From positions 62,001 to 126,000 of IMG/VR virus record IMGVR_UViG_3300008259_005066: DNA of 64,000 nt; one strand, given 5' to 3'. The position numbers were made by a program, and so were the translations under genes. A model generated the notes under the pieces. It had not been told where the DNA came from, made no database searches, and saw only the letters and a list, made by a program, of their open reading frames with translations. Shown here one piece after another: positions 17,689 to 63,265 of the stretch. Numbering within the stretch: the first letter of the stretch is position 1; each line of letters opens with the position of its first letter.

Positions 17689-17703
17689 TGTTTCCTCCAT
17701 TAA

Positions 17704-37014: not shown

Positions 37015-37280
37015 ATGGTTCCTAGGTCTGTAAGATTCATGCGCTCGCGGATGTCCGTTCGCGTCAACTTACTTAAACCTTGGAACCCACCTTCCACAAA
37101 TAATTTGCCTTCAAAATAGATCTGCGGCACCGTGCGATGACCTTTTTCCTGGATGAACTGGCGTGCTTGCTCATCCTTTTCGATGTTGATTTCTTCGAAG
37201 GGTATGTCTTTGCTTTTCAAGTAATTTTTAGCATTGACACAAAACGGGCAAACGGTTTTTGAATACACAGTCAACATCAT
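37011..37280 (-). CDS. Glutaredoxin
   Basis: CPFC, TVPQI, GG. Confidence 0.95.
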   Translation of the reverse strand: MMLTVYSKTVCPFCVNAKNYLKSKDIPFEEINIEKDEQARQFIQEKGHRTVPQIYFEGKLFVEGGFQGLSKLTRTDIRERMNLTDLGTI

Positions 37281-38404
37281 AGACTCATACCAGAAAAAGT
37301 AGCATCTGTGACATCCTGTTTGGTGCCGCCGATCACATAGGAAGTGATCTCAGTTTCTTGAGGTGCTACCTGCACTTCAGCACCTGCGATCCATTTGGCC
37401 GTCCATGGCAAAGGGTTGGATCCGCCGCGATAGCGATTGGGCAAACCAATGGCTGTCATGCGCTTGTGGGCGATCCACTCTACGTAATCGCACAACAACT
37501 GTTTGTTGAGACCGATCATGCTTCCGTCACGGAAAAGATACTCAGCCCACCGTTCTTCTTGTTCTACAGCTGACTCATACATGGTGATCATGTCGGCCTG
37601 TGTTTCTTGTTTGATTTTCACGTAATCTGGATCGTCTTGTGGCAACAGTTTAAGCAGAGTCTGTGTGAATCCTAGATGGACGTTTTCATCACGTGCGATC
37701 AGTTTGATGATCTTGGCATTGCCTTCCATCTTTTTCAACTCAGCAAATGCCCACGAGCAAGCGAACGAAACATAAAATCTTATGCCTTCCAACACATTGA
37801 CCGAGGCCACAGCCAACCATAGTCGTTTCTTCAGTTCATATTCAGTGATTTCCAGTGTCTTGCCGTTGACAGTGTGCCGGCCAACTCCCAACAGTTGATA
37901 GGCAGTGGAGTATTGTATGAGGTCATCATAGTATTTGGAACAGTCTGTTCCGCAGGTCACGATATCTTCGATGTCCAACATCTCATCAAATATCTTGCCG
38001 GGGTCGGAATAGATGTTGCGGATGATGTGTGTGTAACTACGGCTGTGTATGGTCTCATTGAAAGCCCAGGTCTCTATCCAGGTTTCTAATTCAGGCAGTG
38101 TAACCAAAGGCAAGAAGGCCAGATTGGGTGAACGACCTTGCACAGAATCCAGCAATATCTGGCGTTTGAGATTGCTGGTAAAGATGTGCTGTTCCCATGG
38201 TGTGAGATCCTTGAAATCCTTGGAGTCACGTAGCACATCTATTTCTTCTGGACGCCAGAAAAATCCCAACTGCTTGTCGGTGAGTTTGTCAAACTGACGA
38301 TACTTCAGTGTGTCATATCTTTGCATGCCTAGTCCGCCTTGAGGATCAAGAAAAGCCAAGCTCTTGGTGTGGTCACGATTCTTTTTTAGATTCAATACGC
38401 TCAT
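37277..38404 (-). CDS. nrdB: Ribonucleotide reductase class Ia beta subunit
   Basis: FFWRPEE, DSVQGR, ETIHSRSY, EGIRFY, DENVH. Confidence 0.98.
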   Translation of the reverse strand: MSVLNLKKNRDHTKSLAFLDPQGGLGMQRYDTLKYRQFDKLTDKQLGFFWRPEEIDVLRDSKDFKDLTPWEQHIFTSNLKRQILLDSVQGRSPNLAFLPLVTLPELETWIETWAFNETIHSRSYTHIIRNIYSDPGKIFDEMLDIEDIVTCGTDCSKYYDDLIQYSTAYQLLGVGRHTVNGKTLEITEYELKKRLWLAVASVNVLEGIRFYVSFACSWAFAELKKMEGNAKIIKLIARDENVHLGFTQTLLKLLPQDDPDYVKIKQETQADMITMYESAVEQEERWAEYLFRDGSMIGLNKQLLCDYVEWIAHKRMTAIGLPNRYRGGSNPLPWTAKWIAGAEVQVAPQETEITSYVIGGTKQDVTDATFSGMSL

Positions 38405-38416
38405 TTATTATTCTCT

Positions 38417-40726
38417 TTATATTTTGCAACTGTCGCAGTCTTCATCTGCTTGTATCGAAGTGTCGGGGGCTTCGATCAGGATTTCCTGTCTGTTCATCCG
38501 ATCTGCGTCGATCTCCCCCGAGCCATCATAGGTGTTGAAATAATACAACTGCTTGCCACCATACTTATAGAACATGATCATGTGCTTGAGCATGTCACTC
38601 ATAGGGATCTTCTCATCTTCAAAGTGCTGTGGATTGTATGATGTATTCACAGAGATGCCTTGGTCGATATACTTCTGCAAGATAGCCATGATGCGTAGAT
38701 AGCCTTCGGGGCTTTTCTGATCCCACAGCAGTTCATACTTATTTTTGAGTTTGCGATATTCGGGCACTACTTGTTTGAGCACACCATCTTTGCTCTGCTT
38801 GATGGAAACATAACTGCGAGGAGGTTCCACACCATTGGTAGAGTTAGATATCTGTGCTGACGTCTCTGCTGGCATCAAGGCCATCAAGGTAGAATTCCGG
38901 ATGCCGTGTTTTTGTAACTGCTGACGCAGACCTTTCCAGTCCACTAGATCTCGATGCGGCACCAACTCGTCCACATCACGTTTGTAGGTATCCACGGGCA
39001 AGATGCCATCGTGATATCGGGTTTCAGGACTGCGAGGACAGGCGCCAAACTCTTGTGCTAGATCCGCTGATGCTTTGATGAGATAGTATGACCAGTGTTG
39101 CGCCCAACGATCCACTTCAGGCAGTGCTCCGGGGTCACTGTAACTTAGATCGTTCTTGGCCAACCAATAGGCCAGGTTGATGATGCCCACTCCTAGAGGT
39201 CTGCGATTTTCTGTGGCGATCTGCGCGGCCAGGATAGGATAGTTCTGATAACTCAACAATGCATCCAGACCTCGCACAGCCAAAGTGCAGGCACGTTCCA
39301 TGTCTTCGGGATCACGGAACACACCCCAGTTGATGGCGCTGAGTGTGCATAACGCGATCTCGCCGTCCTTGTCATGCACATCATTGAGTGGTTTGGTAGG
39401 TAAGGTGATCTCACAGCAGAGATTGCTCATTTTAATAGGCGCCAAGTCTGGCTTGAACGAGCCGTGAGTGTTGGCGTGATCAACGTTCTGGAGATAGATG
39501 CGTCCGGTATCTTTGCGCTCTTGCATGAATGCCGTGAACAGGTCGATGGCCTTGAGCTTTTTCTTACGGAGTTTGGTGTTGCGTTCGGCTGTTTCATACA
39601 GTTCACGGAAACGTTCCACATCAGTGAAGAAGGCTTCATACATCTCGGGCACATCATGCGGTGAGAACAGCGTGATATCCCCACCAGTCAACAGTCGCTC
39701 ATACATGACTTTGTTGAATTGCACACCATAGTCCATGTGGCGCACACGATTGTCTTCAGTGCCTTTGTTGTTCTTTAGCACCAGGAGATCTTCTACTTCG
39801 TAGTGCCAGATGGGATAATAAAGAGTGGCGGCTCCATTGCGCACGCCGCCTTGGCTACACGAGCGGGTAGCCGCCTGAAACATTTTGTAAAAAGGAATAA
39901 CACCTGTGTGATAAGCATCTCCATTGCGGATGGGTGACCCCAACGCACGTATGCGTCCTCCGCCGATGCCAATACCGGCTTTTTGGCTCACATACTTGAC
40001 CACGCTGGAAGAAGTGGCATTGATTGAATCAAGGCTGTCAGCGGTCTCGATCAGCACACATGATGAGAATTGACGGATAGGAGTGCGCACGCCGGCCATG
40101 ACCGGAGTGGGCAGTGATACCTGATGTGTGGAAATAGCGTCATAATAATCTCGCACCCACATCATGCGGCTTTCTCTTGGATAGTGTTGGAACAGCGTGG
40201 CCGCTATCAACACATAGGCCATCTGCGGAGTTTCAAACAGCTCCTTGGTCACACGATTCTGCACCAGATACTTGCCACGGAACTGTTCCATGGCCGCATA
40301 GGTCAGTTGTTCATCACGATCATGTCGAATGAATGAGTTGATGCGATCCCACTCATCATCGTTGTAGGCAGTGAGCAGTTCCGCGTCATAGAATCCTGCG
40401 GTGACATTTTTCTCGACCAGCTGCCGGATTGGCCAAGGTTGGAACTGGCCGTATACTTGTTTGCGTATATGGTAGCAGATCAGTCGGCCGGCCACAAACT
40501 GATAGTTGGGAGTGTCTTCAGTGATGAGATCCGCGGCGCTCTTGATCAGAGTCTCCTGGATGTCTGCGGTTTTCATTCCATTGTAAAACTGTATGTGACT
40601 TTTAATTTCTACTTCGCTGGCGCTTACGCCTGTGATGCCTTCTGTGGCCCAAAATACTACTTTATGCAACTTCTCGAGATCCAGAGGCTCCTTGCTTCCG
40701 TCTCTCTTTGTGATTTGTATGCTCAT
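38417..40726 (-). CDS. nrdA: Ribonucleotide reductase class Ia alpha subunit
   Basis: ATP cone, SSCVL, SNLCCEI, LYY, C-terminal CDSC. Confidence 0.98.
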   Translation of the reverse strand: MSIQITKRDGSKEPLDLEKLHKVVFWATEGITGVSASEVEIKSHIQFYNGMKTADIQETLIKSAADLITEDTPNYQFVAGRLICYHIRKQVYGQFQPWPIRQLVEKNVTAGFYDAELLTAYNDDEWDRINSFIRHDRDEQLTYAAMEQFRGKYLVQNRVTKELFETPQMAYVLIAATLFQHYPRESRMMWVRDYYDAISTHQVSLPTPVMAGVRTPIRQFSSCVLIETADSLDSINATSSSVVKYVSQKAGIGIGGGRIRALGSPIRNGDAYHTGVIPFYKMFQAATRSCSQGGVRNGAATLYYPIWHYEVEDLLVLKNNKGTEDNRVRHMDYGVQFNKVMYERLLTGGDITLFSPHDVPEMYEAFFTDVERFRELYETAERNTKLRKKKLKAIDLFTAFMQERKDTGRIYLQNVDHANTHGSFKPDLAPIKMSNLCCEITLPTKPLNDVHDKDGEIALCTLSAINWGVFRDPEDMERACTLAVRGLDALLSYQNYPILAAQIATENRRPLGVGIINLAYWLAKNDLSYSDPGALPEVDRWAQHWSYYLIKASADLAQEFGACPRSPETRYHDGILPVDTYKRDVDELVPHRDLVDWKGLRQQLQKHGIRNSTLMALMPAETSAQISNSTNGVEPPRSYVSIKQSKDGVLKQVVPEYRKLKNKYELLWDQKSPEGYLRIMAILQKYIDQGISVNTSYNPQHFEDEKIPMSDMLKHMIMFYKYGGKQLYYFNTYDGSGEIDADRMNRQEILIEAPDTSIQADEDCDSCKI

Positions 40727-41167: not shown

Positions 41168-42778
41168 TTATCCTAGAGTGCTAACAGCGTATCGGAAACG
41201 GCCATTGGCCGTGATGGTGTAAGAGACTTCGATGTCAGAACCTACCTGGCTCACAGAAAGCGTGAGTCCGACAGGACCATTTTCAGTATAGTCATCAGTG
41301 AAAGACACAGGAAAAGTAGAACTGTCATCTATGTCTTCAGATACAATGACCAAGGTGCCGTAACGGACCTGAGTGGTTACTAGATCTTTGAAATTGTATC
41401 GCACTTCAAATGCTGAACCCAGCGCGGCAGGCAATGTCAACAAGGTGCCACTACCAACAGTTTTGTCTACCAGCACACCAGCTTCTTGTACCAAGGTGCC
41501 AAAGCGATATCTCTCGCCGGCTTCCATGGCAAAGACTTTTTTGTTGTCGATATTGATACGTGCTTTTAATTCATCTGCTGAAGAATCACGCTCAAACATA
41601 TCGCCAAAACTTACATTGTTGTCTGTGTCGATCAGTATGACGTTGAAATTGTCGGCGGCAGGATAGGCGCCGCCACGGAATTTGGTGGCCACGTCCAGGA
41701 ACATGTTGAATCCAGACATGTTGTTTTGCGCACCATCGATCTCGATGCCTTCGGCATAGATAGCGTCGAACAAGTTCTGTGTGATGCGGAAACCCTGCGG
41801 TCCTATATAGCCCGCAGTACCAGCACCAGTTCCTGTCAACAGCACACCTTGATACAGCGTGTTGAATTTGCTGTCAGTGACAGTGATACCAGAGATGGCA
41901 GCATCGCTGGATAAACCATAGGTCAGTCCTGAAAATTCGCAGGCCGTGAACGAAATATTCTCTGTGGGATAAGTTGTCGTGGATCCGAATGTGGCACCTG
42001 AGATGTCGTCTACATCGGTGTCAAGTTCGGCCTGCACCAATGGTCCAATGAATGCCACGTCTTGGAACAACACATTGGTGGCTTCCTGGATCGACACTAT
42101 GTTGAGTGTTTCTGCGGACTGGAAGCCCATGTCATAGATTTCTATGTTGGTAGGTGCAGTGGCATTGTTGTTGCCGATGTTGGGATAGACCTGCTGTAGA
42201 CTGTCTGCGGTCTGGGCCACATAAGTAGCAGTCAACGTGCTGTCACCAGTGGTGTCCAAGAATATGACCGAACTGCGGGCACCTTCGCCGTATAATTTAC
42301 AGAACGGGGGGATCTTTATGGTGGAAGTCACACGATACACACCAGCAGGGAAGAATATGCTACGTCTCACCTGTGGATTCTGTTCGCGGCAGAACATCTG
42401 GAACAGGGCACGGTTGATAGCATCAGTGTCGTCGCTGTCTCCGTCGCCCGTGGCACCAAAATCTTTGATCGATGCCATGTCATCCAGTTTGGATTGCAGT
42501 GTGCGCTCGATGGGGTCACCTGGTGTGGGGCCGGTCTGCACAGTGTATCCACCGGCTTCACCTTTGTAGGTGTAGGCTCCAGCTATGGCGAATATGTCAG
42601 AATATTGGGTGAGGATTTCAGTGTTGCCAATGGCAGGAGCACCTTCTTGTATGGTGCCATTGCCGATGAACAATCTGCGCTGGTCGATGACCCAGCCAAA
42701 CTCTGCGCCCGCTAGTTGCGGTAGATTTTCACTTAGACCTTTGCGTTGCGTGATACGCGATATCTGAACTATTGCCAT
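41168..42778 (-). CDS. Tail fibre/spike protein with pectate-lyase-like beta-helix
   Basis: SIKDFGATGDG..DDTDAINRA, FFPAGVY; N-terminal LPQLAGAEFGW. Confidence 0.82.
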   Translation of the reverse strand: MAIVQISRITQRKGLSENLPQLAGAEFGWVIDQRRLFIGNGTIQEGAPAIGNTEILTQYSDIFAIAGAYTYKGEAGGYTVQTGPTPGDPIERTLQSKLDDMASIKDFGATGDGDSDDTDAINRALFQMFCREQNPQVRRSIFFPAGVYRVTSTIKIPPFCKLYGEGARSSVIFLDTTGDSTLTATYVAQTADSLQQVYPNIGNNNATAPTNIEIYDMGFQSAETLNIVSIQEATNVLFQDVAFIGPLVQAELDTDVDDISGATFGSTTTYPTENISFTACEFSGLTYGLSSDAAISGITVTDSKFNTLYQGVLLTGTGAGTAGYIGPQGFRITQNLFDAIYAEGIEIDGAQNNMSGFNMFLDVATKFRGGAYPAADNFNVILIDTDNNVSFGDMFERDSSADELKARINIDNKKVFAMEAGERYRFGTLVQEAGVLVDKTVGSGTLLTLPAALGSAFEVRYNFKDLVTTQVRYGTLVIVSEDIDDSSTFPVSFTDDYTENGPVGLTLSVSQVGSDIEVSYTITANGRFRYAVSTLG

Positions 42779-52628: not shown

Positions 52629-53189
52629 GATGTAGCGGGTAGTTCCGGCTGAAACTACACTCTCTGACCTATGAGAGATTTTGTCTGTTCTATCATGTTG
52701 GATTAGATACCCTGAGTTGTGCTCACTGGGTATCAGGATCGGAGTGTGTTCCGATCCAAAGATTGTTCCCACCCCAGATGAAGTGTAGAGATATATTTGC
52801 ATGGCAACATCGATGTCAGGATTATCAGTGTGCCAACCAATTTCATATCCCGCTTCATCTTTCCAGAGCGATACTCCCCAGAAATGTTTATAGGGGTCTG
52901 TAAACGTTTCATTGATCAGATCTGTCGCAGAATCAAATATTTCATGCAACTCTTCTATCACTGTATCAAAATCCCAAGTGATTTTTTGTCTAGGAAGAGT
53001 TTCTTGACCTTCCACTGTTTGCCATTTGTCATTGGAAACCGATGAAACATACTGATTGAGTTTTTGTAATATCGCAAGATCTAAGACATCTGTTATCTGA
53101 TACAAATCTGCTATAGGGGTAGACAGTCTGTTGGAGATGCAAGACGCTAGATGTTTCTTGTTGTTCTCGATCAAATCCTGATCTATCAT
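52581..53189 (-). CDS. 2OG-Fe(II) oxygenase-like protein
   Basis: WHTDN, QIYL, NSGY, distal H, R. Confidence 0.72.
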   Translation of the reverse strand: MIDQDLIENNKKHLASCISNRLSTPIADLYQITDVLDLAILQKLNQYVSSVSNDKWQTVEGQETLPRQKITWDFDTVIEELHEIFDSATDLINETFTDPYKHFWGVSLWKDEAGYEIGWHTDNPDIDVAMQIYLYTSSGVGTIFGSEHTPILIPSEHNSGYLIQHDRTDKISHRSESVVSAGTTRYILYAVWSRISKHLTDT

Positions 53190-54583
53190 GACTGTTTGAT
53201 TTGTCCTAATAACTGTTTGAGTTTGTTTGATTGCACATCGGCTGTGACCTTGCCAACATCTTCAGCTGGTTCACTGTTGTCATCCTTCATAGTAGACTTG
53301 GCCTTGATTGATTCGTAGATGTTGGGTTTCTTGACAAATCCAGAACTTTGCTGTTGGTCTTCGCCTAAATCTCTGATACGCAGGCTTTCAATGTCAAACT
53401 CTAAATCTACCTTCTGTCCCACTCCACTCGATGAACGAGTCTTCATCAACTGTATCTGATAGCGACCACGTTCACGCATGGCTCGACTTGTGAAGATACC
53501 AAACACATTATCTGCTGTGTTGATCTTGGAAATACCACCCGATATATGGCTATGATCGAACTCAATCTCTTCCACTGCCGCACGATTCAACTGCGAAGCA
53601 GTGACAAACAATACATTGAGTTCTTTAGCCAAGTTGCGCAGTTCTTCTGAAACATACTTGTCTTTGACGAATAAATCATTGGGGCTAACTTTGGCACTCA
53701 CCGGCATGATCAAGTCTAGATAATCTACGCATAAAAAATCCACACGTTTCTTTGTCTTCACTTGCAGTTCTTTGAGATATGCACGGATATCATTCACTGT
53801 GCTCTGTGCTGGCATGTATTTGATCTGCAAGGCGCCGGCCTTCTTCTGCATCATCTTGACTTTCATTTCCACTGTATCGATATCTCGAAAAATTTCTTTG
53901 CTAGACGTATTGGTCATCATGGAGTCGATGCGCATGGAACAAAGACCTTCTGACAGTTCCAGCGTGATGTAACAACCGTTGAGCCCGGCCTGTGCCCAGT
54001 TCACTGCCAAGTTCTGCATGAACAAACTCTTGCCAGAACCTGAACCTCCTGCGAAAATCTGCAATTCACCTCGGTTGAATCCACCATACAGCAATTTGTC
54101 CAGGGCAGGCCATCCAGTAGAGTTCTGTCCATTATTATTTTTCAAGGCCAGCAGTCTCGATCGCGGATCTTCAAAGTAATCTGTGCCCAGATCCTTGGTC
54201 AATGATATTTGCACGGCATCCTTAATCAACTTCTCCACAGGATCAAAATTGCCCTTTTCCAAAAGGTCCGCCGACTTAAGGATCGCACGTTCCAATTCTT
54301 GTCGACGAGTGAATGATTCAAACTCTTCCATGAACCAGTCGAGATGCCCTTCATTGATATCGGGTATTTCTTGTAGGTCAACATTGGTCACTGCTCGAAC
54401 CTGTTTGCGATCAGGCAAAGTTTTGTGTTGATCACAGTGTTCTCGGATAAACTTCGCGGCACTACGCAGGCTGCGATCAAAGTTTTCTTCATTGAATATG
54501 TTCTGCACTCGCACGTAACTCTGTGCGTCCTGCATCATAAACTCCAGGAACAACTTTTGGACTTCTACGGAATAATCTTTCAT
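53186..54583 (-). CDS. Replicative helicase (DnaB/T4 gp41-like)
   Basis: GGSGSGKS, LELSE, VDYLD, TASQLNR, KTR. Confidence 0.95.
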   Translation of the reverse strand: MKDYSVEVQKLFLEFMMQDAQSYVRVQNIFNEENFDRSLRSAAKFIREHCDQHKTLPDRKQVRAVTNVDLQEIPDINEGHLDWFMEEFESFTRRQELERAILKSADLLEKGNFDPVEKLIKDAVQISLTKDLGTDYFEDPRSRLLALKNNNGQNSTGWPALDKLLYGGFNRGELQIFAGGSGSGKSLFMQNLAVNWAQAGLNGCYITLELSEGLCSMRIDSMMTNTSSKEIFRDIDTVEMKVKMMQKKAGALQIKYMPAQSTVNDIRAYLKELQVKTKKRVDFLCVDYLDLIMPVSAKVSPNDLFVKDKYVSEELRNLAKELNVLFVTASQLNRAAVEEIEFDHSHISGGISKINTADNVFGIFTSRAMRERGRYQIQLMKTRSSSGVGQKVDLEFDIESLRIRDLGEDQQQSSGFVKKPNIYESIKAKSTMKDDNSEPAEDVGKVTADVQSNKLKQLLGQIKQS

Positions 54584-55269: not shown

Positions 55270-55973
55270 AGCCATCCTAACTCCTGCATGCGAGGACACA
55301 ATACTTTTTCATACCAATGATGATTGCCCGCAGATCCATAGTGACCGTGCCATCCGTGAGTATCAAAGTCCACGGGACGATGGACATTTTTGTTAGTGCT
55401 GAAGTAGGTATCTTCAAACAGGATACTGTGCGGATCTGCTAAAAATCTTCTCTGTATACTGGCCAGTGTTGGCCACTCGGTCTTGGGCTGGAATGGTTCG
55501 GCGAGATTCACGATGAGATAATTGCTAGTCCATCCTTGGATATATCTAGTCAATAAAAATAATTCTCTAAGAGCCTGTGCTTCTTGCCAACTACGATTCC
55601 ATGACATTACATAGCCTTGGCCCAGCTGATGAGTAGTGACTTGCCTGAGCCCATCATGTTCTCGTAAGCATGGTTGATCTATGGGTTCTAGATTGCCAAA
55701 AAATCTATGATAACTAGGAGCCATACCATCATAATCATACACAGTAAATCTCTCGATAGGGGGCACACCCACTATTACATAATCGTTAGGACTAAATCCA
55801 GAACCAGCCACTATGAGATGTGATATGCTATCTACGTTGTTTCCTGGCCAACTGTAGTTTTCTACACTATCAACTTGCAAGGCAGCAGCCATTAAGCCCC
55901 ACCAAGAATCCTTGACATCTACACAGAATCCTGGTGTGCTATAACTGTCGCCATACACGATCAATCTAGACAT
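55266..55973 (-). CDS. SGNH-like hydrolase
   Basis: YGDSYS, NYSWPGNN, HGHY. Confidence 0.7.
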   Translation of the reverse strand: MSRLIVYGDSYSTPGFCVDVKDSWWGLMAAALQVDSVENYSWPGNNVDSISHLIVAGSGFSPNDYVIVGVPPIERFTVYDYDGMAPSYHRFFGNLEPIDQPCLREHDGLRQVTTHQLGQGYVMSWNRSWQEAQALRELFLLTRYIQGWTSNYLIVNLAEPFQPKTEWPTLASIQRRFLADPHSILFEDTYFSTNKNVHRPVDFDTHGWHGHYGSAGNHHWYEKVLCPRMQELGWL

Positions 55974-56955
55974 GGAGTTTCCTCATGAGATTCTTCCGAG
56001 CCATTTCAATTTTTATTTTACTGGTGCATCGATGCTGGAAAATATTCAACAGCGTGGCCAATCGTCCTTGGCGTATCACTGCATCGTTAACGTCCTTGAC
56101 ATCCGCTGGCCAGTCTGGTATGCTCACTGCCCAACCCAGTTCTATAGCACAATCTATCAACTTGAGACCGGCCTTGTCTTGATCGGGCACCACTGTGACT
56201 TCTCGACCAATACTGCGTATCAGTCTCGCTTGGGTATCATTGATTTCAGCATGCAATACTGCCAATCCACCGATGCTGAGAGCATCAAATATGCCTTCCA
56301 CCACGATCACATGCTGCCAATCTGGTCGCTGTAGATCTGTGCCAAACACATAGCCCTGTTGCATGTCGTGGACGTAGCGAGGATTATGATCATCAAAAAA
56401 TCTACGTGTGTGTCCTACTATGCGTCCATCATAGGTAAACGGTATGATCACACCTTGCCTACGACTGAATTTGTCATCAGGCCGGCCATGGATCATACCT
56501 ATGGGATAATCCTCGGGCACACAACGATCTCTGAGATACTGCCAATGCACTGACATGTCGCGATCCACCAATGCGAATTCTTCCGGCAGTTCTCGATCTT
56601 CAAACTCGATGCCCTGCACCACATTGGCAGTGCGCTGTCGATCATCCAGTATGCCTTGGATGTTTCGATGTTTGAGGCTTTCGAGATTTATATATTCTAT
56701 TTCTTGTTGTGGAACATTAAGCCATTGCAACAGTCTGCGAGCCTTGAATGAAAGATTGCGACCCAGGATGAAGCTGGCAGTGAATCCGCAATTGAAACAG
56801 TGGAAACTCCAACCTTGGTCAGTGGCCTTGATTCCACCGCGCTGTCGTCGATCCTGGCTTTCACCATTGTGAACACAACACGGAGCATTGAATGAAATCC
56901 AGCCAGAACTTGTGCTTTTGCGTTTGGCTGGTAGATAAGAAAATATGTCGATCAC
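55966..56955 (-). CDS. DNA primase (zinc finger + TOPRIM)
   Basis: CCVH...CFNC, VEGIFDA, PDQDKAG, KDVND. Confidence 0.92.
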   Translation of the reverse strand: MIDIFSYLPAKRKSTSSGWISFNAPCCVHNGESQDRRQRGGIKATDQGWSFHCFNCGFTASFILGRNLSFKARRLLQWLNVPQQEIEYINLESLKHRNIQGILDDRQRTANVVQGIEFEDRELPEEFALVDRDMSVHWQYLRDRCVPEDYPIGMIHGRPDDKFSRRQGVIIPFTYDGRIVGHTRRFFDDHNPRYVHDMQQGYVFGTDLQRPDWQHVIVVEGIFDALSIGGLAVLHAEINDTQARLIRSIGREVTVVPDQDKAGLKLIDCAIELGWAVSIPDWPADVKDVNDAVIRQGRLATLLNIFQHRCTSKIKIEMARKNLMRKLHV

Positions 56956-57692
56956 TCTAACATTTTACTATGTTTTATGTGTTCGATCAAGTGGTCTGCA
57001 ATGATTTTATGACCCAATTCATTGGGATGTCCGCCGCGAGCAAACGGTTCTATGCCCAATTCTTTCTTTTTGTTGTATAATATTTCTTTGAAACTCAGTC
57101 CTGGATAGATCAGACTGGGCACTCGTAGAGAATAAGGATTGGGCAATGCGCTGACCTGTATTATCGGAATGCCATACCTGCTCTCGGCCTGATCAAATAG
57201 ATTGATGGATGTTTGGAAATTGTATTCTGCCCATTCTCTATGATAACTCATGCCCAGCCATAATCGTTGCAAAGAGAACCAGTTGTCATCTATGTCGGGG
57301 TTGGGTTGGAGCAACCAAGTTCCGTGCATGTGTCGATTCCATTGCGGATCCTTCATGCTAATTTGATGCTGTGGGTTAAACCAGCTTTGCCGTGTGCTAT
57401 CAGTGTGTGCCACGATAAACAGAACATCGTCGGTGCTCTGACCGTTGCGCAGATACCACATGAAGTTCCAGCGCATGCTTTCAAGGCTGGATCCCGGAAA
57501 AGCCATGTTGTCTAGTTCAAGATCAAATTCTTTGGCAATACGACCCGCAAAGCCATTGGCCAGCCTGTAAGGACGATTTTGATCGTAGTGATCTCGGAAT
57601 GCTTCTTCAGACAAGTCTCGGAATTCAGGAGCGATGAGTTCATCGCCATAGGTCCAACTACAGCCAAATGCCACTAACTTCCTAATCTTCAT
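56952..57692 (-). CDS. SGNH-like hydrolase
   Basis: FGCSWTYG, NMAFPGSS, GGHPNELGH. Confidence 0.75.
   Translation of the reverse strand: MKIRKLVAFGCSWTYGDELIAPEFRDLSEEAFRDHYDQNRPYRLANGFAGRIAKEFDLELDNMAFPGSSLESMRWNFMWYLRNGQSTDDVLFIVAHTDSTRQSWFNPQHQISMKDPQWNRHMHGTWLLQPNPDIDDNWFSLQRLWLGMSYHREWAEYNFQTSINLFDQAESRYGIPIIQVSALPNPYSLRVPSLIYPGLSFKEILYNKKKELGIEPFARGGHPNELGHKIIADHLIEHIKHSKMLE
56962..56990 (-). promoter_or_regulatory. sigma70 promoter giving a leaderless primase mRNA
   Basis: TTGATC-N17-TAAAAT, 6 nt before GTG 56955. Confidence 0.55.
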
Positions 57693-58631
57693 CTATAGGC
57701 GATGGATGTAATGAATCCGTTGTTGATTTTGGCATTGGGATTATTGACGTATCCTGCGCCACCGGCTGTGACTATCACAGCATTGACATTGCCACCTGCA
57801 GTGGCCACGGCATATCCTTCAGCACCTGTGCCTTCGCCCACAAAGTCTACATTAGGGAATGGCGTGGAAATCCACTGACTACCAGAATTGTTCATGGTAA
57901 CATTGGTCACGGTGCCACCACTGACCACTGCATTGCCAATTTTGGCCTTGTAGCCATATTGATTTACTTCGAAACGACTGTCGCTGGCTGCCAACATCAT
58001 ACCATGGCCCCAATTGTGTGCTGGAACCCTGCGCCTTGACGTTGCCCGAGAAATTGTCAAAGTCCATCTGGAAGGTTACAAGATCGCGACCTTGTGTATA
58101 CACCGCAGATGTATGATTGCGATTGGGATTGCTCTGGCTGATTTCCGGGTTGGTAGGAACAGTCATTATCTCACTGGGCACAAATGCAGGATACACTGAA
58201 TCTACTACATCGGCTGTGCCGCGGCCGCCGGAGTAGGCATTGGTAAACACAGGCTCGTAGAGTTCGCTGGTGGCTGAGTTACGTTCAAGGCTCCAGCCCA
58301 CGGGCTGTGCATCAACTTCGTCTAGATCGGTGCTGAGCAGAGTGACCTTGGCCCGGCCGTAAGCGGCACTGAGTATTTCTAGGTCTTTGCTCAACAAAAG
58401 TATATCACCATTGGTCGAGATCAATCGGAAAGTGATGGTAGACCCAGTGATGTTCACGGGTTTCTGATCTTGATTGACGAATTCAAACAGTATGACGTTG
58501 TCTACGCCACGATGGATTTTTAAATTTTTAGCATACACGGGTTGCCACCTCCGGTCAAAATAGGCACCACTGGTGTCGATCAAAATGACCTGCTGTCGCT
58601 GTTGATATAAATAGGCAGTGGTTGAATACAT
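57689..58631 (-). pseudogene. Structural (baseplate/tail-like) gene with a frameshift/deletion near 57977
   Basis: Frame ...WYDVGSQRQ joins RFEVNQYG... in another frame; the two ORFs overlap with nonsense ends. Confidence 0.65.
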
Positions 58632-58652
58632 AAGGTTTTCCTAACGATATTT

Positions 58653-59030
58653 ATGGGCTCTGAAATCTTCGCTAAAATAGCCGAACGCTACCCTTTCATA
58701 ACATTTTGCACCTATGCTGGCAATGAATACATCGGTGTGATACAGAACCGCGATGATGCTGTGACCACCATCTATGATTTTGGCAATATTCCCCACGCAG
58801 ATCTCAAGAAACTGTTCTTAGAATTGGCCAATACTTGGTGGTGGGAAAGCAATCGTAGCATACCTATCAATATATTCCTCAAGCAAGATTGGGAAGTATT
58901 CCGCCCTTATCTCAGGACATTTACCAACAAAGATCTGGAAATAGTGCATGGACCATGCACCAGCCTCACCGACATAGCCCGCAAAAAATCCAAACGCAAA
59001 TCAATCACCCTGGTTCGCAGGATCGATTAA
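58653..59030 (+). CDS. Hypothetical protein
   Basis: 125-aa ORF (WWWESNR.IPINIF); TATAAATA at 58606. Confidence 0.75.
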   Translation: MGSEIFAKIAERYPFITFCTYAGNEYIGVIQNRDDAVTTIYDFGNIPHADLKKLFLELANTWWWESNRSIPINIFLKQDWEVFRPYLRTFTNKDLEIVHGPCTSLTDIARKKSKRKSITLVRRID

Positions 59031-59579
59031 GTTCATGTGCAGTGCTACCAAAGCCGCATAACTGATAGCATGGCTTTTCTTGAAAGTATAACCACGGCTG
59101 TCGTCACCATCCCACACTGACTCAAACACTTCGGCCCATGGGAGATTTTGTAGATGGGCCTTGCCAGGGCGTATGATAGATATAAAAGCTGCCATCCTGG
59201 GTATAGAATCGGGTCTCATGATTGAGAGCAGGCCAGTGTAATTGCCCACATGCACCAATCGGCTGGCCCAGTCTGTATCAGTCCATAATTTTGTCCAAGG
59301 GGGCGATCGATCCAACATGTCTTTGTAATGATCCGGGCCCCGGACCAAAGAATACACGCTCATATTTAAAAAATCCAGTTTGAAGTAACCCCTAGATTCG
59401 GCTTCTTGATAGTCTATGGACGCACATTGATTGATAGGATCCCAAGGTATATCCGTGACATATACTCCGGAGTTGTGTCGTCGCACTTGAGATTCTACAT
59501 GTTGTCTCGCAGATCTGTGCTGTATCAGCGACAGGATCTTTTCTCTATCAGCGAAATCTATGTCAATGTCTGCGCTCAT
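59001..59579 (-). CDS. Miniature DNA polymerase III alpha (family C) catalytic-core homologue
   Basis: DIDIDF, HNSGVY, GYFKLDFL, IRPG, YTFKKSHAISYA in DnaE order within 192 aa. Confidence 0.85.
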   Translation of the reverse strand: MSADIDIDFADREKILSLIQHRSARQHVESQVRRHNSGVYVTDIPWDPINQCASIDYQEAESRGYFKLDFLNMSVYSLVRGPDHYKDMLDRSPPWTKLWTDTDWASRLVHVGNYTGLLSIMRPDSIPRMAAFISIIRPGKAHLQNLPWAEVFESVWDGDDSRGYTFKKSHAISYAALVALHMNLIDPANQGD

Positions 59580-60271
59580 CACCAACCTGCCTGTCGTAAC
59601 ATTTCGCGGGCATACTCTTGATCTGCCGGATAATCGCGGAATTTGCGTTGCCAGAATTCAGGATCGATCCAAGGCCATACTATGGCGATCTGCTCTTGGT
59701 CTAGATCATCCAGCAATTTTTGTCCGCTGTCGCAGTTATACAATACCCAAGCACTGATGCGGCCGGTGGACACAGCATAGGCCACGGCATTGCTGTTGCC
59801 ATATCTCAAACAATCCTGTGCCGGGTGCCCATGGGTTTCACTCCAGTCGATAGAATATTCTATGGCCCGAGCCAAGGCATCATTTACGCTTTCCTTGCGC
59901 ATGTATTCTGCGAGGTATTCTGCATACACGCTGTCTCTACACCAATGATCGATCTTTTTGTTTTTCTCTACCACCCAATCAATGAATCTGGCAGTGTTCA
60001 CAGCACGGATGGCCACACAATGACGGCCAAACTTTACAAAGGCTCGATAGTAAGGACTCTTGGCAAAATCATCAAAGGTTTTGAGTTTGGCAGAACCTTG
60101 CGTCATTTCGTAGAAACGCAGATAGGCCTGTAACCCCAACCGCACACCGGGCTCCTCTCGATCTTGATAACGGCGTTTTTGTTCGCACACATGCACAGCC
60201 AGGCTCTCGGGCCTGGCAAAAGTTTTTTCACAATATCTACAGACGTGGTCAGTCTTTGTTTCCGTGCTCAC
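59579..60271 (-). CDS. Zinc-finger protein
   Basis: CRYCEKTF....LAVHVC. Confidence 0.75.
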   Translation of the reverse strand: MSTETKTDHVCRYCEKTFARPESLAVHVCEQKRRYQDREEPGVRLGLQAYLRFYEMTQGSAKLKTFDDFAKSPYYRAFVKFGRHCVAIRAVNTARFIDWVVEKNKKIDHWCRDSVYAEYLAEYMRKESVNDALARAIEYSIDWSETHGHPAQDCLRYGNSNAVAYAVSTGRISAWVLYNCDSGQKLLDDLDQEQIAIVWPWIDPEFWQRKFRDYPADQEYAREMLRQAGW

Positions 60272-60689
60272 GTAGATACTCTTGTAGTTCTTTTTTGGTG
60301 ACCAACTTGGCCATGACTTCTATGTCAGACATCTTCCAGTTAGGATAGAGGTCTGTCAACGTTTTCTTTACTTCGCTGTTGCCGGCTTCTTTCTTCTTGG
60401 GAGCGATCCACTGATGCCGTTGTGTGCCCAGACCAGGACTCACTGCCGTGGCACATAACCATTGTAGTTTGGGGTGACGATTGATGGCAAAGAAGTTTTT
60501 GTTGAGATAGTGATTGGTGCTCTGCACATAGTATTCCTGCAATTCCTGACCGCCTTGTATGGCAGATCCCCAACGTATCATGAGATAGTTTGAAAACTTC
60601 TTGCGTTCTTCGTCAGTGAGTTCATCATAGAATGATCTGTTTTTACGATCAAACTCGGACATTTCGTTGCCGATGCTTAACTTATCCAT
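60249..60689 (-). CDS. Clamp-loader small subunit-like protein (T4 gp62-like)
   Basis: KKFSNYLMIRWGS...HQWI..KKK pattern; replication context. Confidence 0.55.
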   Translation of the reverse strand: MDKLSIGNEMSEFDRKNRSFYDELTDEERKKFSNYLMIRWGSAIQGGQELQEYYVQSTNHYLNKNFFAINRHPKLQWLCATAVSPGLGTQRHQWIAPKKKEAGNSEVKKTLTDLYPNWKMSDIEVMAKLVTKKELQEYLREHGNKD

Positions 60690-61189
60690 CACCAAGCCTT
60701 GTTGTAGTCAACGATCTCACAGTTCCTGGAGATGTCCTTGACAAAATACACACAATCAGGTTCTGGATCCTCTGTGAGTGGCACACACAGCATCTGACCA
60801 TTTTTTAGTTTAGGGCAATACCATGCCACGTCGTGATAGACATCCACGATCTCTATGTCCAGGAAACTGGGGCGGAATGACGTCAGTGGATTGAACTGGA
60901 ACACTTTGAATCCGCGATCATTGATCGACGTCAACGGCAACATCTCTAGATCGCCCAAGTCGGGCTCACCTATCAGCACTTGCCAGTCTATGGGCATTTT
61001 GATCCTGTGGGATCCGATCTGTAGCACCAAGGCCGGTGAGTTGAAACTCTCAAGGAAGATCAGAGGAATATAGTGATAGTCTGGATCTGCGGGATCTGAG
61101 TTATCTAATATCGCGAAACGCATGTCATCCACTTCTTCGGGTAGCGCATCCAGATCATAGGCTGTGTTGTCTAGTGTGAGTATCTTCAT
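60689..61189 (-). CDS. Hypothetical protein
   Basis: 166 aa, beta-rich; TATAAT 7 nt upstream. Confidence 0.7.
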   Translation of the reverse strand: MKILTLDNTAYDLDALPEEVDDMRFAILDNSDPADPDYHYIPLIFLESFNSPALVLQIGSHRIKMPIDWQVLIGEPDLGDLEMLPLTSINDRGFKVFQFNPLTSFRPSFLDIEIVDVYHDVAWYCPKLKNGQMLCVPLTEDPEPDCVYFVKDISRNCEIVDYNKAW

Positions 61190-61197
61190 AGTATCCA

Positions 61198-61803
61198 TTA
61201 TACGATATAATTTCTGTATCCGCGACCGAGTATGACTCCATAATCTCTCGCGACAAGGACCCCAAATCCTTGCCCCAAAAGATAAGGAACCACGGCGCCA
61301 CCCTTGCCAATAAACACGCCATTGTATTCATAGGTATCATCAACACATATCACACATCGATCACTCATATGCGGCAATAGATTGACCATTTGAGTGACAT
61401 GTGCTGTTTGGCAGTTGATGTTGGTCATGATCAAGCCTTGCTGACTATACCAAGCGATTTGATCCTGGATCATTTGTTGCTGTCTATCAGTGCGCCAATC
61501 CCAGTCGAAGTTATCCAGATACAGCACCCGTATTTTTGACCCGGAATATTGAGCTGTCCATTGGGTGCCTTCGGCTTGCACAAATTCAGCAAGATGGCTG
61601 TGCTCCGGAGCGATAGTTTTGCGCAATCTATGTCTGGCATCTTGATCGAGATCCACAGACACAAATCTCATGTCATGTGTGTGGGCCAGATCTGCGAAAT
61701 AGGCACTGCTGCCTTCCCATCTATCCGACCCAATCTCTACGATAACCTCACCAGAGAACTTGCCCAATAGGTGTTCTCCCACTTGTTGATACAGTTTACC
61801 CAA
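61198..61803 (-). CDS. Class I SAM-dependent methyltransferase-like protein
   Basis: IVEIGS, SVD, LYLD, VDD, GKG. Confidence 0.75.
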   Translation of the reverse strand: MGKLYQQVGEHLLGKFSGEVIVEIGSDRWEGSSAYFADLAHTHDMRFVSVDLDQDARHRLRKTIAPEHSHLAEFVQAEGTQWTAQYSGSKIRVLYLDNFDWDWRTDRQQQMIQDQIAWYSQQGLIMTNINCQTAHVTQMVNLLPHMSDRCVICVDDTYEYNGVFIGKGGAVVPYLLGQGFGVLVARDYGVILGRGYRNYIV

Positions 61804-63265
61804 TGGTCATCCACTCCAGTTTCTCGTGCGTGAAAGGATAACGGGCTTCTTTGTAGAACTGTTTGCGCTTGGTCAAGTGCCTTTTGGCGAATCGGCAGGT
61901 GGAGGTGATGTCCCAGATTTGGACGAAGTCTTTGTCCTCAGCTTTTCTAATGCCGCGCCCAATTGATTGTATAACTCGGACAAAGCTCTTTCCGGGTTCC
62001 ACAAGCACCAGATTGAAAATACGAGGAATATTGATACCAACAGCAGCCACGCCATAGGTAGCAACAATAATTTTATCGGTAGCTTCAGCCACTTCGTCAT
62101 ATTCATCCTGTCTGTCCTTTGCTTTGGTGGCGCCTGAAACAAACACAGCACGGTCGCCCAGTCGTTTTACTAGTTCTTGTCCGGCTGTGATACGATCTAC
62201 CAGCACGAGAGTGTTGCCTGTTTCGTTAACTTGCCGTATCAAACTGGCCATGGTATCCAACCGCCCTGATTCCTCTAAAAGATATTTCAGTTCGCTTTGA
62301 TAGTTGTTGTATTCCACATGGTCTACTAGTTGCACGATGTTGACATGGCACTGCGCCAGCACTCCTCTATCCTGCAGTTCAGCGGCGGCCAGTCGAGATA
62401 TCACTGGTCCTAGACTCACATGCAAGGCCTGGAATTCAAAATCTTCTTTGGGTATGGTTCCTGTCAATCCCCAACGGATTGGCACTTGCGCCATCACGCC
62501 TGTGAGCAGAGTTTTCAGTGCATCGGCCTTGGCCATGTGCACCTCGTCCACTATCACGCACACTACGCCTTCGATAAATTCACCAATGGTGATTTCTGCT
62601 GATTGATTTTTGGTGTTCTTTAACAGCACATTGAGACTCTGCCATGTGCAGATGGTGTGTGTGCGTCCAAACTCTTTGCGGTCTCCGAAGAACACACCCA
62701 CGTCCAGACCCATGTTGATGTAGTCTTTTTCTGTCTGTGTCACAAGACTTTTGTTAGGAACTATCACTATGCTACGACCATAAGGTGTCACAGCATGGCT
62801 CAGGGCGGCAGTCATGATTGTTTTGCCGGCGCCAGTGGCCACTTCTTGCAGGCATTGAGGGTTGGCAAGAAAGTTGTTGACTATGTCAACTTGGTAGTCT
62901 CGCATCATGACAGGTTCGCCGGCATTGGGATGTCCTTTGGGCCAAGAGATGTTAGAGAAAGTGTCTTCTTGCACTTGCTCAAACTCAAAGGTGGTGCGAT
63001 ACTCTCTTTGATCGTCCAGTTCTATGTCGTAACCATATTCTTCCAGCACTGGTATGATTTCAGGCAAGAGGTTTACGTAGGTGCTACCACCCAGTTGGAA
63101 AAAGGAGACCTTGCCATCCCATCGCCCCAATCTTACCGCTGGTAGGTATCTGGCGTAAGGAACATCATATTTGAACTTGTTGACTAGAGTGCGACGTGCA
63201 TCCAGTTCTAGCCCTTCTATCTTGACGTTGACTTCATCTCGTATGCTTAGTCGTGCAGTTCTCAT
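61796..63265 (-). CDS. uvsW: UvsW-like SF2 helicase
   Basis: WDGK, RDYQ, TGAGKT, DEVH, GLTGT, QSIGRGIR. Confidence 0.92.
   Translation of the reverse strand: MRTARLSIRDEVNVKIEGLELDARRTLVNKFKYDVPYARYLPAVRLGRWDGKVSFFQLGGSTYVNLLPEIIPVLEEYGYDIELDDQREYRTTFEFEQVQEDTFSNISWPKGHPNAGEPVMMRDYQVDIVNNFLANPQCLQEVATGAGKTIMTAALSHAVTPYGRSIVIVPNKSLVTQTEKDYINMGLDVGVFFGDRKEFGRTHTICTWQSLNVLLKNTKNQSAEITIGEFIEGVVCVIVDEVHMAKADALKTLLTGVMAQVPIRWGLTGTIPKEDFEFQALHVSLGPVISRLAAAELQDRGVLAQCHVNIVQLVDHVEYNNYQSELKYLLEESGRLDTMASLIRQVNETGNTLVLVDRITAGQELVKRLGDRAVFVSGATKAKDRQDEYDEVAEATDKIIVATYGVAAVGINIPRIFNLVLVEPGKSFVRVIQSIGRGIRKAEDKDFVQIWDITSTCRFAKRHLTKRKQFYKEARYPFTHEKLEWMTIG

What the first reader, a model, noticed from the sequence alone, without database searches (positions are those of the whole stretch)
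59001..59579. 192-aa miniature family-C (DnaE) polymerase core
Seen: all three catalytic Asp positions (DIDIDF, KLDFL) plus HNSGV, IRPG and YTFKKSHAISYA occur in DnaE order with the spacers strongly shortened. There is no PHP, clamp-binding, HhH or OB region. The start overlaps the stop of a zinc-finger gene in an operon with a gp62-like gene, near primase and helicase. Known: bacterial DnaE exceeds 1000 aa, and T4-like phages normally replicate with a family-B polymerase. Inference: clean ends and conserved motifs suggest a selected enzyme, either one half of an intein-less split polymerase or a repurposed primer-extension or terminal nucleotidyltransferase.
Basis: partly seen in the sequence, partly recalled or inferred. 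Interest (0 to 1): 0.82.

Follow-up and report, generated by a model that had tools for sequence, protein, structure and literature searches.

The report
Half of a split mini DnaE polymerase
This 192-residue gene is the metal-binding half of a tiny DnaE-type polymerase core that freshwater and other jumbo phages encode as two far-apart genes alongside a normal T4-type polymerase; the family was described by computation in 2021, but no experiment on it was found.

Summary
The ORF at 59001-59579 (-) is real, intact in independent metagenomes and under strong purifying selection (median dN/dS 0.09). It is homologous to the second half of the bacterial Pol III alpha (DnaE) catalytic core. Its AlphaFold model (pLDDT 96) matches only C-family polymerases, covering E. 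coli alpha 399-781.

It is not a complete polymerase core. The nucleotide-binding "GRGS" half is a separate 173-aa gene about 97 kb away in the same genome. That half ends at ...EFLR, exactly where this ORF begins. Rare natural fusions of 375-376 aa join the two halves with a 9-residue linker, and their model matches DnaE/PolC at Z 21. Thumb, index finger, PHP, clamp-binding and OB regions are absent.

A near-identical 316-kb contig also carries a family-B polymerase. The enzyme was described in silico by Iyer et al. 2021 (Viruses 13:63) as the "split minimal Pol III alpha" of group 2.2 jumbo phages. This is therefore a new environmental member of a known kind. Its biochemical role, probably an accessory DNA polymerase, is untested.

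The parts
59001..59579 (-). C-terminal (Mg2+-binding and template-binding) subunit of the split minimal Pol III alpha; 192 aa
   Evidence: ORF. phrog_11778 at E=4e-52. AF2 model pLDDT 96. Structural match to E. coli alpha 399-781, Thermus alpha 460-838 and Mtb DnaE1 418-807, Z 8.1-9.6. Median dN/dS 0.09. Intact in independent metagenomes.
59553..59570 (-). DIDIDF: D4 and D6 equal catalytic D401 and D403 of E. coli alpha; D8 equals D405
   Evidence: Translation. D4 and D6 are in 84/84 homologues, D8 in 83/84. E. coli numbering checked on dnaE. The catalytic role of D401/D403 is cited from bioRxiv 10.64898/2026.06.29.735100.
59463..59477 (-). HNSGV, equivalent to E. coli HAGGV (511-515). Only about 25 residues separate it from DIDIDF where E. 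coli has about 105, so the thumb is deleted.
   Evidence: H35 in 83/84 and G38 in 82/84 homologues. HAGGV lies at residue 511 of E. coli DnaE.
59367..59381 (-). KLDFL: K67 equals K553 (primer-phosphate contact); D69 equals D555 (third catalytic Asp)
   Evidence: K67 and D69 are in 84/84 homologues. HMM alignment to E. coli 539-641. The role of K553 and the loss of activity in K553A are cited.
59163..59174 (-). IRPG, equivalent to E. coli R639-P640-G641, which lie next to the templating nucleotide
   Evidence: R137 in 83/84, P138 in 84/84, G139 in only 41/84 homologues. Alignment. Role cited.
59055..59090 (-). YTFKKSHAISYA, the helix-loop-helix motif Y754/F756/N757/H760. H170 equals the proposed steric-gate H760.
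   Evidence: H170 in 83/84, K167 in 77/84, Y164 in 66/84 homologues. Alignment to E. coli 739-769. H760 as steric gate: PMC8485763.
59579..60271 (-). 230-aa protein with an N-terminal C2H2-type zinc finger (phrog_11058). Its stop overlaps the C-half start by one base. Conserved upstream neighbour and candidate partner (inferred).
   Evidence: A homologue lies upstream on the same strand in 75 of 76 related loci, directly abutting in 38. It is also upstream in phages Phosso and Paride.
60249..60695 (-). 148-aa conserved neighbour (phrog_11758). The 'gp62-like' label is unproven.
60689..61198 (-). 169-aa conserved neighbour (phrog_11279), function unknown
58653..59030 (+). Convergent 125-aa ORF (phrog_11637) overlapping the 3' end of the C-half gene by 30 nt. 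The tail-to-tail arrangement is conserved.
   Evidence: It lies downstream on the opposite strand in 75 of 77 related loci, and in Phosso and Paride.
61796..63265 (-). UvsW-type DNA helicase at the head of the same-strand gene string
   Evidence: phrog_16 at E=1e-71. Same order in Paride.
55966..56955 (-). DNA primase, downstream on the same strand
   Evidence: phrog_47 at E=9e-31
53186..54583 (-). DnaB-like replicative helicase
   Evidence: phrog_19 at E=9e-71

Best explanation
Shown:
- The ORF encodes the C-terminal subunit of a two-gene, intein-less, minimal C-family (Pol III alpha / DnaE-type) polymerase core typical of group 2.2 jumbo phages.
- It carries the second half of the Pol-beta-like palm: both metal-binding Asp strands (D4, D6, D69) and the primer-phosphate lysine (K67).
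- It also carries a stump of the fingers: RPG next to the templating base, and the Y-x-F-K-K-S-H helix-loop-helix with the putative steric-gate His.
- The missing first half of the palm, with the R-G-S nucleotide-binding loop, is a 173-aa protein encoded about 97 kb away on the same strand. That protein ends where this one begins.
- Natural single-chain versions exist and fold like DnaE residues 270-773.

Inferred:
- The two proteins assemble non-covalently into one active site that adds dNTPs to a primer on a template.
- Because thumb, index finger, PHP, clamp-binding and OB parts are missing, the enzyme is probably distributive. It would depend on partners, or act on short stretches such as primer extension, gap filling or repair.
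- It would act beside the phage's family-B replicase. The neighbouring zinc-finger, 148-aa, 169-aa and convergent 125-aa proteins are candidate partners.
For: Identity:
- phrog_11778 matches at full length, E=4e-52.
- The family profile hits PDB Pol III alpha chains.
- The AF2 model (pLDDT 96) matches only C-family polymerases by Foldseek (probability 1.0, then a drop to noise) and by VIA-align (Z 8.1-9.6 over residues 1-191, E. coli 399-781).

Partner half:
- PF07733 hits at 29-30 bits at G000:C1:23293-23508, inside a 173-aa ORF that holds GVGRGSS and ends in EFLR.
- phrog_11127 is matched to its last position.
- An HMM of the N-halves aligns to E. coli 322-392.

Co-occurrence and conserved split:
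- The two halves are found in about 96 and about 100 phage records with near-identical tallies by organism name, tens of kb apart.
- Both halves occur in G001, G002, G003, G006 and G007.

Natural fusions:
- P0209, P0271 and P0272 (375-376 aa) come from three samples.
- Alignment A3 shows the N-halves ending and the C-halves starting on either side of a 9-residue linker.
- The fused model matches Thermus, Mtb and E. coli alpha and PolC at Z 14-21.5 with about 290 residues aligned. The next unrelated hit has Z 3.1.

Selection and conservation:
- D4, D6, K67, D69 and P138 are invariant.
- Median omega is 0.089 over 104 pairs.
- More than 7,900 homologues of each half have tightly conserved lengths.

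Template-dependent DNA synthesis:
- Equivalents of K553, R639-P640 and H760 are conserved.

Family-B polymerase in the same phage:
- G006 carries 100% identical halves plus an 891-aa PolB ORF.

Prior description: Iyer et al. 2021.
Against: - No biochemical or genetic data were found for any member.
- The index-finger segment carrying R709, R710, K714 and K715 contacts the incoming dNTP in E. coli. It is replaced by about 10 residues.
- The thumb is gone, so stable primer-template binding and normal dNTP closure are not assured.
- R390 has no aligned Arg in the N-half. Only the terminal Arg of EFLR lies nearby.
- Assembly of the two halves is inferred from co-occurrence, colinearity and fusions, not observed.
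- The C-half alone does not reach any Pfam threshold.
- No RNA run holding the gene was listed.
Confidence: 0.85

Rival explanations
1. The N+C pair is a non-canonical nucleotidyltransferase rather than a templated DNA polymerase. Candidates are a terminal transferase or tailing enzyme, a primer-independent oligonucleotide or signalling-nucleotide synthase, or an RNA-adding enzyme.
For: - The DnaE palm belongs to the Pol-beta nucleotidyltransferase superfamily. The only non-polymerase structural neighbour of the fused model is OAS3 (Z 3.1).
- The thumb, the index finger with its dNTP-clasping basic residues, and all processivity modules are deleted.
- The phage already has a family-B replicase.
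Against: - The residues that touch the primer's last phosphate (K553 = K67, invariant) and the templating nucleotide (R639-P640 = R137-P138) are conserved.
- The proposed deoxyribose steric gate (H760 = H170, 83/84) is also conserved.
- The gene sits in a helicase-primase-DnaB replication module.
Confidence: 0.12
2. The 192-aa protein is a self-sufficient miniature polymerase, as in the reader's title.
For: All three catalytic Asp residues lie in this ORF, and it folds confidently on its own.
Against: - It starts at the equivalent of E. coli residue 398-399. It therefore lacks the GS-motif strand and the helices of the first palm half that bind the nucleotide.
- That half is a separate, co-occurring and equally conserved gene.
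- The two are fused in rare relatives.
Confidence: 0.02
3. It is a decaying remnant or an assembly or deletion artefact of a full-length phage or host dnaE.
For: The size is about one sixth of DnaE, and the single sequence has no Pfam hit.
Against: - More than 7,900 homologues measure 186-204 aa.
- The PHROG family profile is 197 positions long.
- Omega is about 0.09.
- Identical sequence occurs in independent studies.
- Among the 150 best of 355 cluster representatives none is a full-length DnaE; the longest are three 375-376-aa fusions.
Confidence: 0.01

Closest known systems
Split minimal DNA polymerase III alpha of group 2.2 jumbo phages (Iyer, Anantharaman, Krishnan, Burroughs, Aravind 2021, Viruses 13:63; examples in PA5oct, RaK2/121Q/CBB, Atu_ph07, Phosso)
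   Same: - Same two half-size proteins, phrog_11778 and phrog_11127.
- Same split point.
- The halves are tens of kb apart.
- Same replication-module synteny.
- It accompanies a family-B polymerase.
- Identity to these phages is 37-42% for the C-half and 35-53% for the N-half.
   Different: This copy comes from an uncultured freshwater phage lineage found in lake and freshwater metagenomes. That lineage is under 60% identical to any isolate. Nothing differs in architecture.
Bacterial Pol III alpha (E. coli DnaE 2HNH/5FKV, Thermus 3E0D, M. tuberculosis DnaE1 5LEW) and PolC (3F2B)
   Same: - Pol-beta-like palm.
- Catalytic Asp triad.
- K553, R639-P640 and Y754/F756/H760 equivalents.
- GS motif, supplied here by the partner protein.
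- Colinear order of all elements.
   Different: - About 365 aa in two chains, against 1160 aa in one.
- No PHP domain.
- No thumb (E. coli 407-510 is replaced by about 25 aa).
- No index finger (642-738 is replaced by about 10 aa).
- Nothing beyond about residue 781: no clamp-binding, HhH, OB or tau-binding parts.
- The C-half does not reach the PF07733 threshold.
Cyanobacterial split-intein DnaE (DnaE-n / DnaE-c)
   Same: A C-family polymerase encoded by two distant genes.
   Different: - There the halves carry intein pieces and are spliced into one full-length chain. The split lies far downstream, in the fingers (from my own knowledge).
- Here no residues are available for an intein. The natural fusion needs only a 9-residue linker.
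- Here the split lies between the GS-motif half and the Asp strand of the palm.
Natural single-chain minimal Pol III alpha (P0209, P0271, P0272; 375-376 aa; AT-rich metagenomic phage contigs)
   Same: Both halves are colinear and 36-40% identical to the window phage's halves. The gene sits in the C-half's locus context, with a convergent downstream ORF and, on contig L130, a p250-like gene.
   Different: The halves are fused through a short linker. The form is very rare: three clusters, against thousands of split ones.

Membership tests
C-family DNA polymerase catalytic subunit (DnaE/PolC) | Pol-beta-like palm with three catalytic carboxylates (E. coli D401, D403, D555) | tested here: met
   D4, D6 and D69 are invariant in 84/84 homologues. 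Structural match at Z 8.1-9.6 alone and Z up to 21.5 for the fused relative.
C-family DNA polymerase catalytic subunit (DnaE/PolC) | GS nucleotide-binding motif (R362-G363-S364) in the same polypeptide | tested here: not met
   The motif is absent from this ORF, which starts at the equivalent of residue 398-399. It is present in trans, as GVGRGSS in the 173-aa protein at G000:C1:23287-23808.
C-family DNA polymerase catalytic subunit (DnaE/PolC) | N-terminal PHP domain | tested here: not met
   PF02811 has no match at E<=10 in the 209-kb record, while the control genomes are all positive. Neither half has room for it.
C-family DNA polymerase catalytic subunit (DnaE/PolC) | Thumb domain, and index finger with dNTP-contacting R709/R710/K714/K715 | tested here: not met
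   About 25 residues lie between DIDIDF and HNSGV, against about 105 in E. coli. About 10 residues lie between RPG and the HLH motif, against 98. Roles cited.
C-family DNA polymerase catalytic subunit (DnaE/PolC) | Helix-loop-helix motif with steric-gate His (Y754, F756, H760), and R639-P640 at the templating base | tested here: met
   Y164, F166, H170, R137 and P138 are conserved. Roles cited.
C-family DNA polymerase catalytic subunit (DnaE/PolC) | Beta-clamp-binding, HhH, OB and tau-binding C-terminal modules | tested here: not met
   The protein ends at the equivalent of E. coli residue about 781. A phrog_405 scan of the genome finds only the two palm pieces.
C-family DNA polymerase catalytic subunit (DnaE/PolC) | Pfam PF07733 above the gathering score | tested here: not met
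   The C-half has no Pfam hit at E<=1. The N-half scores 30.0 bits against a 23.9-bit cut-off.
C-family DNA polymerase catalytic subunit (DnaE/PolC) | Template-directed DNA polymerase activity | not testable with these tools
   This needs biochemistry. No experimental paper was found.
Split minimal Pol III alpha of group 2.2 jumbo phages (Iyer et al. 2021) | Stand-alone C-terminal unit of about 190 aa carrying the Mg2+-binding Asp residues | tested here: met
   phrog_11778 at E=4e-52, positions 7-191 of 197. 37-42% identity to PA5oct, Atu_ph07, Phosso and Rak2-like proteins.
Split minimal Pol III alpha of group 2.2 jumbo phages (Iyer et al. 2021) | Separate N-terminal NTP-binding unit encoded at a distant locus of the same genome | tested here: met
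   The halves are about 97 kb apart on the same strand. The spacing is the same in G006.
Split minimal Pol III alpha of group 2.2 jumbo phages (Iyer et al. 2021) | Host genome is a T4-related jumbo phage with a family-B polymerase, UvsW-type helicase, DnaB and primase | tested here: met
   The helicases and primase are in the window. PolB is absent from the 60%-complete record. It is present in the 316-kb contig with identical halves and in relatives G001, G002 and G007.
Split-intein DnaE | Intein (Hint) segments at the split ends | tested here: not met
   The N-halves end at EFLR and the C-halves begin 2-4 residues before the Asp motif. The fused relatives bridge the gap with 9 residues. No extra sequence is present.

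The most novel reading that the evidence does not exclude
The split mini Pol III alpha may not be a mere back-up polymerase. It could be the catalytic heart of a dedicated multi-protein module built with its conserved neighbours: the C2H2 zinc-finger protein (translationally coupled here), the 148-aa and 169-aa proteins and the convergent 125-aa protein. These partners would replace the lost thumb, index finger and clamp contacts. The module might act like eukaryotic Pol alpha, extending primase products before hand-off to the family-B replicase. Alternatively it might be a specialised repair or recombination polymerase, or a nucleotidyltransferase with a non-replicative product.
Probability: 0.15. 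Interest if true: 0.75.

Novelty: new member of a known kind. Interest (0 to 1): 0.4.

Why it matters
At about 365 residues in two chains, this is the smallest C-family polymerase core I am aware of. It shows which parts of the bacterial replicase are dispensable for a selected function. It is abundant: thousands of variants of each half occur in metagenomes. Iyer et al. proposed it as a model for the ancestral Pol III module. Its real activity, its partners and its division of labour with the family-B replicase are all untested. Cultured relatives (PA5oct, Rak2-like phages) and the natural single-chain form make it directly testable. For the scan itself, the finding is a correct recognition of an already published oddity, not a new class.

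Tried and rejected
- A single-sequence Pfam scan and a single-sequence PDB phmmer search of the C-half gave nothing. Homology needed PHROGs, a family profile and structure.
- Megablast of 9 kb around the gene found no close isolate phage.
- PolB, PHP and DnaQ-like exonuclease searches in the 209-kb record were negative. I do not read the missing PolB as absence. The record is about 60% complete, and G006 places PolB about 35 kb beyond the N-half, off the end of this record.
- Alignments A2 and A4 (fused, N-half and many C-half rows together) were misaligned by MAFFT and discarded. A3 was checked and used.
- G008 (92% complete) has the N-half and PolB but no C-half. With the usual spacing of about 98 kb, the C-half would fall just past that contig's end, so it is not counted as an exception.
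- The 'gp62-like' neighbour: PF16790 was negative by HMM, with only an Atlas feature lead. This is left unresolved.
- No metatranscriptome holding the gene was listed, so there is no expression evidence.
- The PA5oct omics paper, the PaBG paper and a 2026 jumbo-phage review say nothing about this enzyme.
- Co-folding of the two halves, or with the zinc-finger protein, could not be run. The structure tool takes one natural chain, so the natural fusion was modelled instead.

Full report
**1.

The minus-strand ORF 59001-59579 encodes 192 aa from its ATG; a TTG two codons upstream would give 194 aa. Translating the exact coordinates gives five motifs in the order they have in bacterial DnaE:
- DIDIDF at 59553-59570
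- HNSGV at 59463-59477
- KLDFL at 59367-59381
- IRPG at 59163-59174
- YTFKKSHAISYA at 59055-59090

The ATG shares one base with the TGA of the upstream 230-aa zinc-finger ORF, reading TGATG. A primase, a DnaB-like helicase and a UvsW-type helicase lie within 6 kb. Contigs from three independent studies cover 58835-60594 without a single difference. A fourth run holds a diverged strain with substitutions only. The ORF boundaries are therefore real.

**2. Homology to the DnaE catalytic core**

The single sequence hits no Pfam family and no PDB sequence. Three stronger tests do show the homology.
- It matches phrog_11778 ('DNA polymerase', 197 positions) end to end at E=4e-52.
- A profile of 84 diverse homologues hits Pol III alpha of E. 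coli, Thermus and M. tuberculosis at E=8e-6 to 5e-4. Positions 53-138 align to E. coli 539-641, and 149-178 to 739-769.
- The AlphaFold model is very confident (pLDDT 96, pTM 0.89). By Foldseek its top 14 matches are all C-family polymerases, followed by noise. VIA-align places residues 1-191 on E. coli alpha 399-781, Thermus 460-838, Mtb DnaE1 418-807 and PolC 969-1301, at Z 7.8-9.6.

**3. Residue-level reading**

E. coli numbering was checked on dnaE itself. Residue roles come from a 2026 cryo-EM preprint and from Vaisman et al. 2021.

| This ORF | E. coli alpha | Role | Conservation in 84 homologues |
|---|---|---|---|
| D4, D6 | D401, D403 | catalytic Asp | 84/84 |
| D69 | D555 | third catalytic Asp | 84/84 |
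| K67 | K553 | binds the primer's last phosphate; K553A is inactive | 84/84 |
| R137, P138 | R639, P640 | next to the templating base | 83/84, 84/84 |
| Y164, F166, H170 | Y754, F756, H760 | helix-loop-helix motif; H760 is the proposed steric gate | H170 83/84 |

Two elements of the E. coli enzyme are missing.
- The thumb: about 25 residues lie between DIDIDF and HNSGV, against about 105 in E. coli.
- The index finger: about 10 residues stand where E. coli has 98. That segment includes R709, R710, K714 and K715, which clasp the incoming dNTP.

The protein ends at about residue 781 of E. coli alpha. It therefore has none of the outer fingers and no clamp-binding, HhH, OB or tau-binding parts.

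**4. It is only half of the core**

A six-frame PF07733 search of the window's genome found a second piece. The genome is a single 209,518-bp virus contig, about 60% complete by CheckV. The piece lies at C1:23293-23508 inside a 173-aa ORF at C1:23287-23808 (-), which holds GVGRGSS and ends in EFLR.
- It passes the Pfam threshold (30.0 against 23.9 bits).
- It matches phrog_11127 up to that profile's last position.
- It aligns to E. coli 322-392, which holds the R362-G363-S364 nucleotide-binding loop.

E. coli reads ...ERFLNPERVSMPDFDVDF. The phage N-half stops at EFLR and the window ORF starts at MSADIDIDF. The break therefore removes about four residues of a loop inside the palm. The two genes lie about 97 kb apart on the same strand.

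**5. The split is ancient, conserved and functional**

- Both halves occur in about 96 and about 100 isolate jumbo-phage records with near-identical tallies by organism name: PA5oct-like, RaK2/121Q/CBB-like, Atu_ph07, Phosso and others. The halves are always tens of kb apart.
- Each half has more than 7,900 metagenomic homologues with tight length ranges: 186-204 aa for the C-half, mostly 173 aa for the N-half.
- Among 355 cluster representatives found with the C-half, one of the 150 listed is 375 aa long and matches over its residues 190-373.
- That protein and two relatives from other samples are natural fusions of N-half, a 9-residue linker and C-half. They sit in the C-half's usual locus context.
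- In the checked alignment A3, every N-half ends and every C-half begins on either side of that linker.
- The fused protein's model (pLDDT 80; residues 80-375 confident) superposes on Thermus, Mtb and E. coli alpha and on PolC at Z 14-21.5, with about 290 residues aligned. Model residues 71-375 correspond to E. coli 270-773, from the PHP/palm border into the fingers. The next unrelated hit, OAS3, has Z 3.1.
- Codon analysis of 65 gap-free orthologues gives median dN/dS 0.089 (range 0.04-0.16). The window versus its 92%-identical relative gives 0.096.

**6. The phage also has a family-B polymerase**

PF00136 and tblastn with relatives' PolB find nothing in the 209-kb record. IMG/VR contig G006 (315,778 bp, 91% complete) carries 100%-identical copies of both halves, about 98 kb apart. 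It also carries an 891-aa PolB ORF about 35 kb beyond the N-half, which would lie off the end of the window's record. G001 (345 kb, 99% complete), G002, G007, Phosso and Paride likewise have PolB together with both halves. No PHP domain was found.

**7. Gene context**

The gene order is: helicase, 169-aa, 148-aa, zinc-finger protein, C-half, convergent 125-aa ORF, structural-like gene, primase, DnaB.
- In 80 metagenomic relatives plus Phosso and Paride, the zinc-finger gene lies upstream in 75 of 76 informative loci, directly abutting in 38.
- In the same set, the convergent ORF lies downstream in 75 of 77.
- The order persists in Phosso and Paride at about 33% identity.

These proteins have no known function. 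The 148-aa protein has only a language-model lead to PF16790, which I recall as T4 gp62's family, and HMM tests were negative. That they are partners of the polymerase is an inference.

**8. What is known**

Iyer et al. [quoted passage not shown] It accompanies a family-B polymerase and lacks the other Pol III domains. They suggested a role in synthesis of one strand or in repair, and saw it as a model of the ancestral enzyme. Some GenBank records already label the genes 'DnaE-like DNA polymerase III alpha'. I found no experimental study.

**9. Verdict**

The headline 'miniature polymerase core' overstates what this ORF alone can be. The feature is a new, uncultured freshwater member of a published family.

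The most likely mechanism is non-covalent assembly of the two halves into a Pol-beta-type active site. That site would perform primer- and template-dependent dNTP addition. It would probably be distributive or partner-dependent, and accessory to the family-B replicase. The conserved primer, template and steric-gate residues favour this reading. The missing thumb and index finger keep a non-canonical nucleotidyltransferase role open, at about 10-15%.

Increments beyond the 2021 description are:
- the natural single-chain forms;
- the residue-level map of what was kept and lost;
- the selection estimate;
- the very large metagenomic family;
- the conserved, here translationally coupled, zinc-finger neighbour.

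Noticed in passing
window 57976/57977, inside overlapping ORFs 57879-58631 (-) and 57689-58060 (-): Contigs from runs X3 and X9 carry 56 extra bases here, and X14 carries 59, that the window lacks. The two overlapping ORFs (virion-structural-like, phrog_1084/14467) are probably one longer gene broken in the window by a frameshifting deletion or an assembly slip.
   Followed up: partly
L100:1066-2193 and L130:519-1649 (metagenomic contigs, 25-27% GC): These are natural single-chain versions (375-376 aa) of the minimal Pol III alpha, with the N- and C-halves joined by a 9-residue linker. There are three clusters from different samples. They make a ready-made single-chain construct for biochemistry.
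   Followed up: yes
window 60249-60695 (-): The 148-aa conserved neighbour has a language-model and structure lead to PF16790 Phage_clamp_A, which I recall as the family of T4 gp62, the clamp-loader small subunit (score 0.90). No HMM support was found, and no AAA+ gp44-like gene is adjacent.
   Followed up: partly
G000:C1:22434-22805 (L003:642-1013, -), two genes downstream of the N-half: This is a GroES/Cpn10-like co-chaperonin gene (phrog_931 'head morphogenesis', PF00166 weak). The N-half therefore sits in a quite different module from the C-half.
   Followed up: no
L004/L008 (Pseudomonas phage Paride, record positions about 88.9-92.7 kb): The family-B polymerase of this PA5oct-like phage is found in two separate ORFs (825 and 379 aa), about 2.5 kb apart. 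The main replicase also seems interrupted or split there.
   Followed up: no
G008 (IMG/VR contig behind L120, 320,175 bp, 92% complete): It has the N-half and PolB but no detectable C-half. With the usual spacing of about 98 kb, the C-half would lie just beyond the contig end. This is probably truncation, not loss.
   Followed up: partly
window 61198-61803 (-): A methyltransferase-like ORF (PF13578 / CmcI-like, below threshold) lies between the UvsW-type helicase and the polymerase gene string. It was not matched in the Phosso and Paride loci, nor in L019, L081 or L046.
   Followed up: no
whole window: Other annotated genes:
- radical SAM protein, 172-1494
- endonuclease, 12160-13179
- UDP-glucose dehydrogenase, 16444-17721
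- AAA+ ATPase, 27558-28757
- ATP-dependent DNA ligase, 32167-33549
- class I RNR small and large subunits, 37277-40726
- tail-spike-like protein, 41168-42778

These fit a T4-related jumbo phage.
   Followed up: partly
window 58600-61300: At least 14 DNA runs from many studies hold 86% or more of the sampled words of this stretch. They include lake-water and freshwater runs and several labelled 'fungus metagenome'. The phage is widespread in fresh water. No RNA run holding it was listed.
   Followed up: partly
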